Assembly: GCF_023055435.1 (NCBI RefSeq)
Contig: NW_025963868.1
Span: 3,100,001-3,164,000, forward strand
Direction: 5' to 3'
Source of the DNA: Haliotis rufescens
Lineage: Eukaryota
DNA length: 64,000 bases
Part shown: in pieces, positions 12,807 to 55,301 of the stretch
Numbering within the stretch: the first letter of the stretch is position 1
Layout: every line of letters starts with the position of its first letter
Notes under the pieces: model-generated
Seen by the model: only the letters and a program-made list of their open reading frames with translations
Told to the model about the DNA's origin: nothing
The model's database searches: none
Translations under genes and position numbers: made by a program

Positions 12807-12951
12807 GGTTAGAAGTCATCGATCCACTGCATCTATCTCACGTCAGCCTGCATCTGCTCCTGTTGTTGTACAGTGAAGGATACAGAGACGCGTAGATGTG
12901 GAAGCGTTACTCTGACTGAAGATCCTTGTAGTCTCGCAGTAAGCCCTAGAG

Positions 12952-15900
12952 TCAGCAGTAGAATTTAGACCCGTGGCCTGACTTAGCCGAACTGACATCC
13001 TCGTCATTGAATGTAGCATTGTGGAGCTCGCTGGTGGAACAATATTCTCTGTTACTCACTCCTGGCAGGTAGGCAGCTTGCCTGTGGTTTATAATAGAAG
13101 AGATAAAAATTATGGGGAAAGGAATGTAGGAAACAGAGGTTTCTCATTCAACACTTGAACACTGGGGACATTCTATTTCGATATTAGGGGCGGTCGGGTA
13201 GCCTAGTGGTTAAAGCGTTCGCTCATCACACCGAAAACCCGGATTCAATTTCCGACATGGGTACAATGTGTGAAGCCCATTTCTGGTGTCACCGCCGTGA
13301 TATTGCTGGAATATTGCTAAAAGCGGCGTAAAACCATACTCACTCACTCACTCACTATTTCGATATTCAAATAATTTGACTTTATACTTGAAATTGAATT
13401 ATTATAAAAATGGAACATACATTATATGTCTGTCAAATTTGTAGCCCAAACGAAATACATGTAACGAAAAACCCAACGCGTTCACGAATCATTAAAAACG
13501 CTAAGTGTTTACGTAATAACGCATACAGTTTTATATGTGGTGTAATATTGTTTGTTGTTTGCTTGTTGTTTAACGCCGCAATCAGCAATATTCCAGCTAT
13601 ATGATGGCGGTCTGTAAATAATCGAGTCTGGACCAGACAATCCAGTGACTGACATCATGACCATCGATCCACGTAATTGGCATACGATGACATGCATCAA
13701 CCAAGTCAGCGGGCCTGACCACCCGACCCCGTTAGTCGCCTCTTATGACAACCATAGTCCCATTTTACGGCAAGCATGGGTTGCTGAAGACCTATTCTAC
13801 CCCGGATCTTCACAGGTCATGTTGTGTAATAACTTCAGTAAGAGACGTATTCTTTGAATCATTTGCCTGAAGTAGTTGAATGTTTATTAGATCGCAATAA
13901 TACAGCATTCAATGTCTAGAGATTTATTATTTTGAACTAGTTTTAACTTTATTACTGATTTCCCGAAAGAAAAAGAACCGTGACATATTCCCTATGTTTA
14001 TGCAATGAAACAGTCGTGTTCTTAGTCAGATAACTCCTTAGTACCTGATGCTGGAGAAGGACAACCGGACACCCTCGGCAAAGACTGTGGCGTAGGGAGA
14101 CTCGTTGCTGACATTTGACGCTCTGTTGTTCCGTACTGTCAGGTAGGCAGCGTACCTAGAGGTGACAAACTTACAGTAACAGAAATACTATATGACAAAA
14201 TAAATAAATAATTACTCTTCCTCTGAACCTTTTCATTGAATGTCAACTTTTACTAAGTCAAAATCCTAATGTAGACCAAACTCAATTTACGTTTTATCTT
14301 TTATTTGTTAGATAAATTGTACAAAGATGTGATGACCATTAAGAAATGTACATTCGTTAAATTCTGTTGTGATATCTGTTTTACTTACCTTAATTTCCGA
14401 TTTTCTGAAAAGCAAAACAAAGAGCTATTACCAGTTGTTACACAGTAGTATAAAGTCCAGTACATACATTCGGCAAGTGTCACTGTTATCAGGAAATATT
14501 TCCGTGATTGCTCCATCTCCCAAAGATCACTGGCACTTTCAGTCACATGCTTGCAGCTTCAGTCAATGCCAACAACTTACCTCTCACTCTCCTGCATCTT
14601 CGTATCATCAGGCAGACAACAGCTTACCTCGCACTCTCCTCCATCTACGTATCATGCAGACAACAGCTTACCTCTCACTCTCCTGCATCTTCGTATCAGG
14701 CAGACAACAGCTTACCTCTCACTCTCCTGCATCTATGTATCAGTCAGACAACAGCTTACCTCTCACTCTCCTCCATCTATGTATCAGGCAGACAGCAGCT
14801 TACCTCTCACTCTCCTGCATCTTCGTATCATGCAGACAACAGCTTACCTCTCACTCTCCTGCATCTATGTATCAGACAGACAACAGCTTACCTCTCACTC
14901 TCCTGCATCTTCGTATCAGGCAGACAACAGCTTACCTCTCACTCTCCTGCATCTATGTATCAGTCAGACAACAGCTTACCTCTCACTCTCCTCCATCTAT
15001 GTATCAGGCAGACAGCAGCTTACCTCTCACTCTCCTGCATCTTCGTATCATGCAGACAACAGCTTACCTCTCACTCTCCTGCATCTATGTATCAGACAGA
15101 CAACAGCTTACCTCTCACTCTCCTGCATCTTCGTATCAGGCAGACAACAGCTTACCTCTCACTCTCCTGCATCTTCGTATCAGGCAGACAACAGCTTACC
15201 TCTCACTCTCATGCATCTTCGTATCAGGCAGACAACAGCTTACCTCTCACTCTCCTGCATCTTCGTATCAGACAGAAAACAGCTTACCTCTCACTCTCCT
15301 CCATCTTCGTATGATGCAGACAACAGCTTACCTCTCACTCTCCTGCATCTACGTATCAGACAGACAACAGCTTACCTCTCACCCCCTGTATCTATGTATC
15401 AGGCAGACAACAGCTTACCTCTCACCCCCTGTATCTATGTATCAGGCAGACAACAGCTTACCTCTCACCCCCTGTATCTATGTATCAGGCAGACAACAGC
15501 TTACCTCTCACTCTCCTTCATCTATGTATCAGGCAGACAGCAGCTTACCTCTCACTCTCCTGCATCTACGTATCAGGCAGACAACAGCTTACCTCTCACT
15601 CTCCTCCATCTATGTATCAGGCAGACAGCAGCTTACCTCTAACTCTCCTTCATCTATGTATCAGACAGACAACAGCTTACGTCTCACTCTCCTGCATCTT
15701 CGTAGCAGGCAGACAACAGCTTACCTCTCACGCTCCTGCATCTTCGTATCATGCAGACAACAGCTTACCTCTCACTCTCCTGCATCTTCGTAGCAGGCAG
15801 ACAACAGCTTACCTCTCACTCTCCTGCATCTTCGTATCAGGCAGACAACAGCTTACCTCTCACTCTCCTGCATTTTCGTATCAGACAGACAACAGCTTAC

Positions 15901-54400: not shown

Positions 54401-55301
54401 TTTTCTTCATCATGCTATGTCTTGGAATTTAATTTGTAATCGATGGCAGGAGATTTTGAAATCCTAAATTCCAAAGGATAGCGATAGTCCCCATGTTACA
54501 TTATCTGGGTAAAAACTGCACAGGTTATAAATGTGACGTCAATGACGTCGCCTTGCCGAATACCTACACTCTCCTGGCCCATAACAAAGTAGTGTCCCGC
54601 TCCTGTCCTTATTAAAGGTTTTACTTCCTCTAAAACTCAAGAGGTCTGCTGCTAATGACAATACAAGCGTTCCAGCGATATTTTTTAATGTTTTGTTTTC
54701 ATAACAGCTATGTAGTTTTATACGCATTCATTTCCTAACAAGTATTCTGTTAATCCCACATAATACTTACGTGACACAACGAGGACCTGCCTACATCCGG
54801 GAATTATCTGCTTTTTGCTTCCTTGACAGTAGTAAGTACCAGCGTCCTGAACAGTAACATTGTAGATGGTAAACCTCAGCTGTGCGATCTGTGATGGTGA
54901 GTCCTCCCCTGTGTATCTGATCCTGGTCGTGTAGCCGGTGTGCCTGCTGTTGAGTACCCATACATAGTGTGACCTAGGTATAACCACAAACAGTCTGTCA
55001 GCTTCCGAACCATTCCTCCATACGTAATATAGGTAGCTGACATGAGCTGGGTTCATGGTCATGTTAACATCGTAGCCAACACGTGTAACAGTGTGTGGGT
55101 AGTCAGTTGTCACGGAGGCCAGACCTGCTCATAAAACAAATACTCATCATAGAAACTCATTAATTAATGAATATTGACAGTTGACAGACATAAAACATAA
55201 AAACAACTATATATAATGCCAAGTTCTGTTGACGAAGACAGATACATACCACACCCATACAGTCCTCCCGCCACAACGTAAAACGAGAACATAGCCGCCA
55301 T
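45361..55301 (-). CDS. IgSF type-I receptor, gene 3 (SP-V-Ig-Ig-TM, ITAM-bearing tail; 36-aa duplication in domain 2)
   Basis: Exons 55250-55301, 54771-55124 (V), 52486-52893 (408 nt), 50858-51124, TM-A 50211-50333, 48493-48514, 48241-48296, 47813-47834, 47562-47617, 46251-46266, 45361-45538 (DYERLLREQFHIYTSL). Collinear with gene 2, open frame. Confidence 0.82.
46752..46865 (-). CDS. Alternative transmembrane exon TM-B of gene 3
   Basis: 114-nt phase 1-1 exon (Y)DVNVDDIVPVVAVYSVILTAVAVVVAAAAILVCKDVK; acceptor CTTAAG, donor GTAAGG. Confidence 0.7.
52968..54213. mobile_element. Nested SINE B / SINE A / solo-LTR-like element (53236-53944) / MITE
   Basis: Paralog of 36950-37920 with an extra MITE. 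Confidence 0.82.
53470..53793. mobile_element. MITE with TA target duplication (Tc1/mariner/pogo-type)
   Basis: Perfect TIR CCGTATTCGACGTAATAAGCGCCC / GGGCGCTTATTACGTCGAATACGG flanked by TA; empty site at about 37450. Confidence 0.9.

What the first reader, a model, noticed from the sequence alone, without database searches (positions are those of the whole stretch)
12860..55301. Candidate paired activating (ITAM) / inhibitory (ITIM) Ig-receptor cluster in an invertebrate
Seen: three tandem paralogs share very similar SP-V-Ig-Ig ectodomains but differ in their tails. Genes 2 and 3 end in D-YERL-LREQFHI-YTSL, an exact YxxL-x7-YxxL ITAM with acidic residues upstream. Gene 1 stops before the homologous segment and has an extra exon with SPYATV, a canonical S-x-Y-x-x-V ITIM, plus AAYLTV. 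Established: vertebrate paired receptor families (CEACAM1/CEACAM3, Siglec-5/14, SIRP) use this layout. Inference: a lineage-specific, probably molluscan, paired immune or allorecognition receptor system. The ORF track misses it because the tails are built from micro-exons.
Basis: partly seen in the sequence, partly recalled or inferred. Interest (0 to 1): 0.9.

Follow-up and report, generated by a model that had tools for sequence, protein, structure and literature searches.

The report
Abalone Ig receptors with ITAM/ITIM tails
Three neighbouring abalone genes encode near-identical antibody-like surface receptors: two end in a conserved activating-type tyrosine motif and one in an inhibitory-type motif, as in vertebrate paired immune receptors, but a second membrane-spanning segment leaves it open whether the activating motif faces the cell interior.

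Summary
The window is abalone (Haliotis) DNA. It carries three intact minus-strand genes, each signal peptide, V, Ig, Ig. Every junction is AG/GT and no exon has an internal stop. All N gaps lie outside coding exons.

- **Genes B and C:** they end in D-YERL-x7-YTSL.
- **Gene A:** it has its own transmembrane exon, a 16-nt micro-exon and an exon with AAYLTV and SPYATV. It stops before a decayed ITAM that holds three in-frame stops.

B and C are recent duplicates, so they are not independent evidence. The independent evidence is the family:
- This genome has 19 open copies of the tail exon. YERL is intact in 19 of 19 and Y..L in 18 of 19; dN/dS is 0.13 in the core.
- About 40 NCBI models in four Haliotis species carry the same tail.
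- SPYATV tails recur in H. rubra and H. cracherodii, usually with an ITAM-like motif behind them.

Main caveat: 39 of 40 annotated ITAM-tail proteins have two transmembrane helices. The motif sits behind the second one, so a cytosolic position is unproven. The exon phases would allow either helix to be skipped.

An SHP-2 gene and a Syk-like first exon exist in this genome. ITAM- and ITIM-bearing Ig receptors are already published for oyster and Hydractinia. Earlier scan notes concern this same window only.

The parts
12952..23237 (-). Gene A (ITIM type, about 423 codons). Exons: SP 23237-23186, V 23059-22712, Ig2 21963-21664, Ig3 19194-18937, TM 18296-18189, 16-nt 14404-14389, ITIM exon 14155-14045, last exon from 13030 (or 13081) to 12952.
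   Evidence: Exon phases, AG/GT at every junction and no internal stops. Homologue alignment, P0080 and P0128. Pfam Ig hits.
14045..14155 (-). Gene A tail exon with AAYLTV (14151-14134, non-canonical) and SPYATV (14100-14083, canonical ITIM).
   Evidence: The same exon is found in H. rubra P0080, P0128, P0046 and in H. cracherodii P0113, P0114.
12883..12954 (-). Gene A stop (TGA 12954-12952), followed by the decayed ITAM DYKDL-x8-YASL (12930-12883). Further in-frame stops: TAG 12948-12946 and TAA 12909-12907.
   Evidence: Intact counterparts are DYVSL-x8-YTAL and DYETL-x8-YTAL in P0128 and P0114.
14570..18222 (-). 44-bp x 83 tandem array in gene A's intron after the TM exon. Each unit is the last 34 nt of the exon plus GTAAGCTGTT, so each carries a consensus 5' splice site.
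28705..38997 (-). Gene B (ITAM type, about 513 codons). Exons: SP 38997-38946, V 38818-38486, Ig2 36874-36575, Ig3 34603-34337, TM1 33521-33399, 22-nt 31718-31697, 56-nt 31500-31445, 22-nt 31038-31017, 56-nt 30821-30766, TM2 30065-29949, 16-nt 29513-29498, last exon 28882-28705.
   Evidence: RNA-type contigs join Ig3 to TM1 to the 22-nt exon, and bound the TM2 exon exactly at 30065/29949.
28747..28791 (-). Gene B ITAM-like motif: YERL, seven residues, YTSL, with D directly before the first Y.
45361..55301 (-). Gene C (ITAM type, about 555 codons). Exons: SP 55301-55250, V 55124-54771, Ig2 52893-52486 (with an in-frame 108-bp internal duplication), Ig3 51124-50858, TM1 50333-50211, 22-nt 48514-48493, 56-nt 48296-48241, 22-nt 47834-47813, 56-nt 47617-47562, TM2 46865-46752, 16-nt 46266-46251, last exon 45538-45361.
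45403..45447 (-). Gene C ITAM-like motif: YERL, seven residues, YTSL.
28192..28777 (-). 83/148-bp tandem array that repeats the 3' third of the last exon (the REQFHIY.. segment). It starts inside the exon of gene B.
   Evidence: The same partial copies follow the tail exon at the other family loci in this genome.
45004..45433 (-). The same tail-exon-derived tandem array in gene C.
35635..35823 (.). Assembly gap in gene B's Ig2-Ig3 intron. Not filled; it affects no coding exon.
45863..45990 (.). Assembly gap in gene C's intron between the 16-nt exon and the last exon. Not filled; it affects no coding exon.

Best explanation
**What it is (shown).** The locus is part of a large Ig-superfamily receptor family found so far only in Haliotis. 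Each protein has a signal peptide, a V-like domain and two I/C2-type Ig domains, then a transmembrane part and a tail assembled from micro-exons.

**Genes B and C (shown).** They are recent duplicates. Their last exon carries a strongly conserved D-YERL-x7-YT[SC]L motif. A conserved EYLTV lies upstream of it, and two acidic GSYQEI modules lie between two transmembrane helices.

**Gene A (shown).** Its ectodomain is as similar to B as C is, but its 3' half is different. It has one transmembrane helix and a tail with the conserved ITIM SPYATV. Its ITAM has been removed by stop codons.

**How it most likely works (inferred).**
- A Src-type kinase phosphorylates the tail tyrosines after the receptors cluster.
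- The doubly phosphorylated YERL/YTSL pair recruits a Syk-type tandem-SH2 kinase.
- Phosphorylated SPYATV on gene A recruits SHP-2.
- Receptors that see similar ligands therefore give opposite outputs, as CEACAM1 and CEACAM3 do.

**Condition.** This needs the B/C tail to be cytosolic. That holds only in isoforms that skip TM1 or TM2, which the exon phases allow, or if TM2 does not insert into the membrane.
For: **Gene models.** All three are intact, and the exons carry Ig domains.

**Shared 5' halves.** A matches B and C at 88-90% over more than 2 kb, non-coding DNA included. Its 3' half does not align with theirs.

**Conservation in this genome.**
- 19 open copies of the tail exon lie in three clusters on one chromosome.
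- YERL is intact in 19 of 19 copies, and the second Y..L in 18 of 19. The two residues between that Y and L vary.
- dN/dS is 0.33 for the exon and 0.13 for the core, with synonymous changes inside the motif.

**Conservation in other species.**
- The tail is present in 40 NCBI models from H. rubra, H. asinina, H. cracherodii and H. rufescens.
- Gene-A-type tails with a single TM keep YxxL-x8-YxxL. The spacer differs in sequence and length, which points to constraint on the motif rather than on a helix.
- SPYATV is conserved in two other species.

**Splicing.** The phases let Ig3 join TM2, or TM1 or a module join the 16-nt exon, in frame. One annotated protein, P0083, skips TM2.

**Expression.** Family exons, including TM2 and the tail exon, lie in spliced RNA-type contigs.

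**Effectors.**
- An SHP-2 orthologue is present: two SH2 exons plus a phosphatase exon, with PTPN11 as best solved match at E 8e-36.
- A first exon whose best solved match is the N-terminal SH2 of human SYK, E 3e-15, is present.
- In oyster, an Ig receptor with an ITAM binds Syk (PMC6994640).
Against: - 39 of 40 annotated ITAM-tail proteins contain both TM1 and TM2. By sequential insertion that puts the tail outside the cell.
- No annotated or assembled isoform with TM2 alone was found.
- The one RNA contig that crosses TM1 ends in a short tail without any motif.
- No run is on record as RNA, and nothing shows gene A expressed.
- Ancestral gene-A-type tails carry ITIM and ITAM together.
- Gene A has only one canonical ITIM.
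- Gene A's intron holds 83 decoy splice donors, and its tail is decaying, so it could be on its way to a pseudogene.
- All the motifs also fit YxxPhi.
- B and C are not independent of each other.
Confidence: 0.5

Rival explanations
1. B and C are two-pass membrane proteins: ectodomain out, TM1, a cytosolic loop with the two GSYQEI modules, TM2, C-terminus out. The 'ITAM' is then an extracellular or luminal peptide and never meets a kinase. Signalling, if any, runs through the YQEI loop, which resembles Src-SH2 or hemITAM sites. The tail is conserved for some other reason, for example as an amphipathic helix.
For: - Both TM helices are in 39 of 40 annotated ITAM-tail proteins from four species.
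- All exons of B and C are in frame when all are included.
- The modules between the helices are acidic tyrosine motifs typical of cytosolic signalling.
- The hydrophobic residues of the tail core fall at helical spacing.
Against: - The homologous motif is cytosolic in the single-TM gene-A-type proteins, and it survives a change of spacer length from 7 to 8 and of spacer sequence. That fits a motif, not a helix.
- Y and the residue at +3 are invariant while +1 and +2 vary.
- TM2 has no K or R on its N side, 8 acidic residues there, and 3-4 K/R on its C side. That is the charge pattern of an N-out, C-in helix.
- TM2 is a duplicate of TM1, and all cassettes are phase 1-1, so they can be skipped.
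- P0083 skips TM2.
Confidence: 0.25
2. These are adhesion-type Ig molecules. Their tail tyrosines are YxxPhi sorting signals for AP-2 endocytosis or trafficking, or generic SH2 docking sites. They are not a balanced activating/inhibitory immune pair.
For: - YERL, YTSL, YLTV, YATV and YQEI all fit YxxPhi.
- The ITIM pattern is common by chance, 4.7 per 1000 residues.
- The closest solved relatives are adhesion molecules: CEA, CADM4, DSCAM, MAG.
- No tissue or immune-challenge data exist.
Against: - The exact two-motif spacing of 7-8 residues with an acidic residue before the first Y is kept in both tail lineages.
- The family is large, clustered and variable in its V exon, like immune-type multigene families.
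- The precedent in molluscs is an ITAM-Syk link.
Confidence: 0.15
3. There is no functional pair because gene A is a decaying copy. Its tail is truncated, three stops lie in the former ITAM, and 83 decoy splice donors follow its TM exon. The only other ITIM exon found in the genome is frameshifted.
For: - Stops and decay in the tail.
- The 44-bp array.
- The second ITIM exon, at C90:1118160-1118261, has a 1-nt deletion.
- There is no expression evidence for gene A.
Against: - All eight coding exons of gene A are open with good splice sites.
- The ITIM exon itself is intact and conserved.
- H. rubra P0080 is likewise an ITIM-only model.
Confidence: 0.1

Closest known systems
CEACAM1 / CEACAM3 paired receptors (vertebrates)
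   Same: - Linked genes have near-identical Ig ectodomains headed by a V-like domain.
- One member has an ITIM tail. The other carries an ITAM-like motif in its own tail rather than using an adaptor.
- Short-tail splice forms exist.
- CEA is the best solved sequence match, E 1.4e-20.
   Different: - There is no orthology; the match is generic Ig similarity.
- The abalone ITAM-type genes have a duplicated TM exon and YQEI micro-exon modules.
- The ancestral ITIM-type tail also carried an ITAM.
- Function is untested.
Oyster CgIgR (Crassostrea gigas), an ITAM-bearing Ig receptor that binds CgSyk (PMC6994640)
   Same: It is a mollusc type-I Ig-superfamily receptor with D/ExxYxxL-x(6-12)-YxxL in its own tail. 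It shows that ITAM-Syk-ERK signalling exists in molluscs.
   Different: - It has five Ig domains, a single TM and an unrelated tail sequence.
- It is not described as part of a paired cluster.
- The abalone tail exon was found only in Haliotis.
Hydractinia Alr gene family (10.1101/2022.03.04.482883)
   Same: It is a clustered invertebrate family of V-set/I-set receptors. Some members carry ITAMs and others ITIMs, and Syk, Shark and SHP homologues are present in the genome.
   Different: - It is cnidarian and linked to allorecognition.
- The tails are too diverse to align. In the abalone family one tail exon is kept nearly unchanged in 19 genes.
hemITAM receptors (CLEC-2, Dectin-1)
   Same: An acidic run directly precedes a single YxxL/I in the abalone GSYQEI modules. 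This is a resemblance recalled from memory and was not tested.
   Different: - hemITAM receptors are type II C-type lectins with the motif at the N-terminus.
- In abalone the motif lies in 26-residue micro-exon modules between two TM helices.

Membership tests
ITAM | Sequence YxxL/I-x(6-8)-YxxL/I with an acidic residue before the first Y | tested here: met
   D-YERL-x7-YTSL in B and C. It is kept in 18 of 19 genome copies.
ITAM | Lies in the cytoplasmic part of a membrane receptor or adaptor | tested here: inconclusive
   It lies behind a second TM helix in 39 of 40 annotated homologues. Skipping a TM exon is in frame, but it was seen only once, in P0083. The homologous motif is cytosolic in single-TM relatives.
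ITAM | Conserved under selection as a motif | tested here: met
   dN/dS is 0.13 in the core. Y and +3 are invariant while +1 and +2 vary. It is present in four other species.
ITAM | Both tyrosines phosphorylated and bound by the tandem SH2 domains of a Syk/ZAP-70/Shark kinase | not testable with these tools
   This needs phosphopeptide binding or cell assays.
ITAM | A Syk-family kinase is encoded in the same genome | tested here: inconclusive
   A first exon at C112:26903522-26903728 best matches the N-terminal SH2 of human SYK, E 3e-15.
ITIM | Sequence (S/I/V/L)xYxx(I/V/L) | tested here: met
   SPYATV meets it. AAYLTV does not, because it has A at -2. The pattern is common by chance, 4.7 per 1000 residues.
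ITIM | Cytoplasmic position | tested here: met
   Gene A has one hydrophobic helix followed by RRCRRVR, then the tail exons. This is a prediction only.
ITIM | Conserved in relatives | tested here: met
   SPYATV is in H. rubra P0080, P0128, P0046 and in H. cracherodii P0113, P0114.
ITIM | Recruits SHP-1/2 or SHIP, and such an enzyme is present | tested here: inconclusive
   An SHP-2 orthologue is present at C212:3.143-3.159 Mb. Binding cannot be tested here.
Paired activating/inhibitory receptors | Closely linked genes with highly similar ectodomains | tested here: met
   A, B and C lie within 43 kb. Per-exon identity is 78-94%, and A is as close to B as C is.
Paired activating/inhibitory receptors | Opposite signalling capacity of the members | tested here: inconclusive
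   The motifs differ as required, but the topology of B and C is unresolved, and ancestral gene-A-type tails carry both motifs.
Paired activating/inhibitory receptors | Co-expression on the same cells and shared ligands | not tested
   No tissue-resolved RNA data were usable.
CEACAM family (orthology) | Orthologous relationship to vertebrate CEACAM genes | tested here: not met
   Only generic Ig similarity to CEA, E 1.4e-20 over Ig domains. All close relatives are Haliotis proteins under assorted automatic names.

The most novel reading that the evidence does not exclude
One gene may make several signalling forms by choosing between two duplicated transmembrane exons. The forms would be tail-less (TM1 plus read-through), YQEI-only, and ITAM-bearing. 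Including or skipping a TM exon would flip a conserved ITAM tail into or out of the cytosol. This splice-controlled topology switch would sit next to an ITIM-only paralogue, in a family of about 20 genes confined to Haliotis.
Probability: 0.15. Interest if true: 0.8.

Novelty: new variant of a known kind. Interest (0 to 1): 0.55.

Why it matters
If the tails signal as their motifs suggest, abalone, and perhaps other gastropods, evolved a multigene paired-receptor system on their own, with the same logic as CEACAM, KIR or SIRP families. It would be built from a different tail exon and an unusual duplicated transmembrane cassette. That would give a workable case for how activating and inhibitory receptor pairs arise by exon duplication, 3'-end swapping and motif loss. 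It would also give candidate pathogen-sensing receptors for a farmed mollusc. Even now, the finding yields exact exon models that the ORF track and simple annotation miss.

Tried and rejected
1. **Chance read-through into a repeat.** My first suspicion was that the second half of the ITAM was a chance read-through into an 83/148-bp tandem repeat. I rejected this. The exon is conserved and open in 19 genome copies and in four other species. The repeat is made from the exon's 3' end at every family locus, not the reverse.

2. **ITIM exon in B and C.** None was found by tblastn. Genome-wide there is only gene A plus one frameshifted copy.

3. **TM2-only or short isoforms.** The protein search with the tail region returned only the known two-TM models. 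The search with the tail exon alone found nothing, but its length window excludes most candidates, so the blank means little. Cluster members were all two-TM as well.

4. **Read laying.** The joints table was filled by joints from a very abundant SINE-like element (29285-29376, 33665-33863). Low-depth splice joints were cut from the listing, and only three informative contigs could be read. No run is on record as RNA.

5. **Syk hunt.** The tandem SH2 pair on C1 is followed by a Csk-like kinase. The pairs on C79 look like PLC-gamma, judged by eye, and have no kinase nearby.

All searches were exon by exon or with database proteins.
   - No N stretch was filled.
   - No structure or complex prediction was run. 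The alignments are shallow and confined to one genus, so they could not settle membrane topology.
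Full report
**What is there**

The window is abalone DNA. A profile-free search with the V exon of gene C, followed by a search with its best hit, returned only Haliotis proteins. They come from H. rubra, H. asinina, H. cracherodii and H. rufescens, under assorted automatic names such as CD22-like, CEACAM-like, Siglec-like and CADM4-like.

Three genes lie on the minus strand. I rebuilt them exon by exon from homologue alignments, splice sites and phase arithmetic.
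- **Gene A** spans 23237-12952.
- **Gene B** spans 38997-28705.
- **Gene C** spans 55301-45361.

Every junction is AG/GT and no exon contains a stop. Pfam finds Ig domains in the V, Ig2 and Ig3 exons.

The assembly gaps were checked first. 35635-35823 is in B's Ig2-Ig3 intron. 45863-45990 is in C's intron before the last exon. 12622-12806 lies downstream of A's stop. Homologous proteins run straight across the flanking exons, and the gap-free paralogue shows no exon at the matching place. Nothing was filled.

**The observation**

It is confirmed in every detail.
- B and C end in D-YERL-LREQFHI-YTSL.
- A has a separate exon (14155-14045) with AAYLTV and SPYATV. A then stops at TGA 12954-12952, in front of a decayed DYKDL-x8-YASL that holds two more stops.
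- The tails are built from micro-exons of 16, 22 and 56 nt.

Per-exon identity among the ectodomains is 78-94%, and A is as close to B as C is. At the DNA level, A matches B and C at 88-90% over more than 2 kb around the V exon, non-coding sequence included. Behind Ig3 there is no similarity at all. Shared 5' halves with swapped 3' halves is the layout of paired receptors.

**Is the ITAM more than chance?**

B and C cannot vouch for each other. They are a 16.5-kb duplication, 92-96% identical including introns. In addition, the second YxxL lies at the start of an 83/148-bp tandem repeat, which first made me suspect an accidental read-through.

The family settles it.
- This genome holds 19 full, open copies of the tail exon in three clusters on one chromosome. 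Each is followed by partial repeats of its own 3' end, so the repeat derives from the exon.
- YERL is intact in 19 of 19 copies, and the second Y..L in 18 of 19. The two residues between that Y and L vary (T/R/M and S/C/Y/R).
- Several codons inside the motif carry synonymous changes. dN/dS is 0.33 for the exon and 0.13 for the core. The paralogues are not independent, so these are rough figures.
- The same tail is in 40 NCBI models from four species.
- The bare pattern occurs 0.24 times per 1000 open-frame residues in this window.

**The ITIM**

An ITIM pattern alone is weak evidence, at 4.7 per 1000 residues. However, SPYATV recurs in H. rubra (P0080, P0128, P0046) and H. cracherodii (P0113, P0114).

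Most of those tails have a single transmembrane helix and carry both SPYATV and an intact ITAM-like DY(V/E)(S/T)L-x8-YTAL. So the ancestral gene-A-type tail had both motifs. The window's gene A, like H. rubra P0080, is a derived ITIM-only form.

AAYLTV is not canonical. It is homologous to the invariant EYLTV at the start of the B/C tail exon. Gene A's ITIM exon is a partial duplicate of that exon's 5' half.

Genome-wide I found only gene A's ITIM exon and one frameshifted copy, against 19 ITAM exons.

**The complication**

In B and C, and in 39 of 40 annotated ITAM-tail homologues, the reading frame runs through TM1, one or two 22+56-nt modules each ending in an acidic GSYQEI, a second helix TM2, the 16-nt exon, and only then the ITAM exon. 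With a cleaved signal peptide and sequential insertion, the tail would end up outside the cell.

Against taking that at face value:
- TM2 is a duplicate of TM1.
- It keeps an acidic N-side with no K or R, and a K/R-bearing C-side. That is the charge pattern of an N-out, C-in helix.
- All cassettes are phase 1-1, so Ig3 to TM2, or TM1 or a module to the 16-nt exon, stay in frame.
- One annotated protein, P0083, skips TM2.
- The homologous motif is certainly cytosolic in the single-TM relatives, and it stays invariant in the two-TM lineage. That is hard to explain if it had moved outside the cell.

I could not resolve this. It is the main uncertainty.

**Expression**

Four runs whose contigs cover exons but not introns were laid on 28690-34640. 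They behave like RNA, although none is on record as RNA.
- One contig joins Ig3 (from 34337) to TM1 (33521-33398) to the 22-nt exon. It then reads through the donor, which gives a stop after RGYFHNR. This short-tail form matches NCBI models that end soon after TM1.
- Another contig contains the TM2 exon with exactly the predicted boundaries (30065/29949) and unplaced flanks, so it is spliced on both sides.
- The tail exon is covered in all four runs.

The joints table was swamped by a SINE-like repeat, so what precedes TM2 in transcripts remains unknown. Many of the laid contigs differ from gene B at several positions, so they may come from paralogues.

**Effectors**

- An SHP-2 orthologue is present: two SH2 exons and a phosphatase exon on one strand at C212:3.143-3.159 Mb, with PTPN11 as best solved match at E 8e-36.
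- A first coding exon at C112:26903522-26903728 best matches the N-terminal SH2 of human SYK, then ZAP-70. The rest could not be fetched.
- Other tandem SH2 loci turned out Csk-like or PLC-gamma-like.

**Comparison with what is known**

- The best solved sequence match is CEA, but only as generic Ig similarity. There is no orthology to CEACAMs or Siglecs.
- In function-like layout, the closest system is CEACAM1/CEACAM3.
- In molluscs, oyster CgIgR has an ITAM and binds CgSyk (PMC6994640).
- Hydractinia Alr genes carry ITAMs or ITIMs.
- I found no paper on this abalone family.

It is therefore a new variant of a known kind. Its new features are a Haliotis-restricted tail exon kept in about 20 genes, a duplicated TM cassette, YQEI micro-exon modules, and an ITIM-only neighbour.

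**Verdict**

The anatomy and the conservation are solid. The paired activating/inhibitory function is plausible but unproven, at about 0.5. The rivals, which are not mutually exclusive, are:
- a two-pass topology that hides the ITAM outside the cell (0.25);
- YxxPhi sorting signals on adhesion-type molecules (0.15);
- a decaying gene A (0.1).

Earlier notes of this scan (s1-805596, s1-805609, s1-805638, s1-805712) concern this same window. None is from other DNA.

Noticed in passing
window 14570-18222 (minus-strand sense): A 44-bp unit is repeated 83 times. It starts inside gene A's TM exon. Each unit is the last 34 nt of the exon plus GTAAGCTGTT, so the intron carries about 83 copies of a consensus 5' splice site.
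   Followed up: partly
window 28192-28777 and 45004-45433; also G000:C90 at 1.19-1.68 Mb and 31.27-31.38 Mb: Every ITAM exon in the genome is followed by tandem partial copies of its own 3' third. Some NCBI models (P0082, P0088, P0134, P0043) read these repeats as coding.
   Followed up: partly
window 52548-52772: The Ig2 exon of gene C has an in-frame 108-bp internal tandem duplication (36 residues). H. rufescens P0081 shows the same doubled segment.
   Followed up: no
window 31718-31371: RNA-type contigs read through the donor of the first 22-nt micro-exon. That gives a stop after RGYFHNR and at least 350 nt of trailing sequence. This short-tail isoform matches NCBI models that end soon after TM1.
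   Followed up: partly
window 46865-46872 versus 30065-30075: Gene C lacks 7 nt at the TM2 acceptor relative to gene B. A nearby AG is used instead, so the exon is 3 nt shorter and one Glu is lost while the frame is kept.
   Followed up: yes
window 54771-55124, 38486-38818, 22712-23059: The V-like exon has no B-strand cysteine. Its only cysteines are in YYC or YSC and in PGC near the end, so the usual Ig disulfide is absent, as in CEACAM N domains. The comparison is from memory and was not tested.
   Followed up: no
window 29285-29376, 33665-33863 (also about 36978-37217 and 52997-53236): A SINE-like, probably tRNA-derived element reaches depths of 10^4-10^5 in the RNA-type contigs and produces many false joints.
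   Followed up: no
window 24494-24760 and 40117-40503: Open frames in the intergenic spacers upstream of genes A and B look like Tc1/mariner transposase fragments, judged by eye. P0122 is an NCBI model that fuses such a transposase to an ITAM tail.
   Followed up: no
G000:C90:1118160-1118261 (L032:1501-1602): This is the only other ITIM-type exon found in the genome. It has STYATV, but a 1-nt deletion puts a stop after YAAYRQY.
   Followed up: yes
G000:C1:61697081-61707839; G000:C79:26426016-26432160 and 26531180-26534835: A Csk-like kinase gene is preceded by two complete SH2 exons 3.9 kb apart. There are also two tandem-SH2 loci that look like PLC-gamma, judged by eye.
   Followed up: partly
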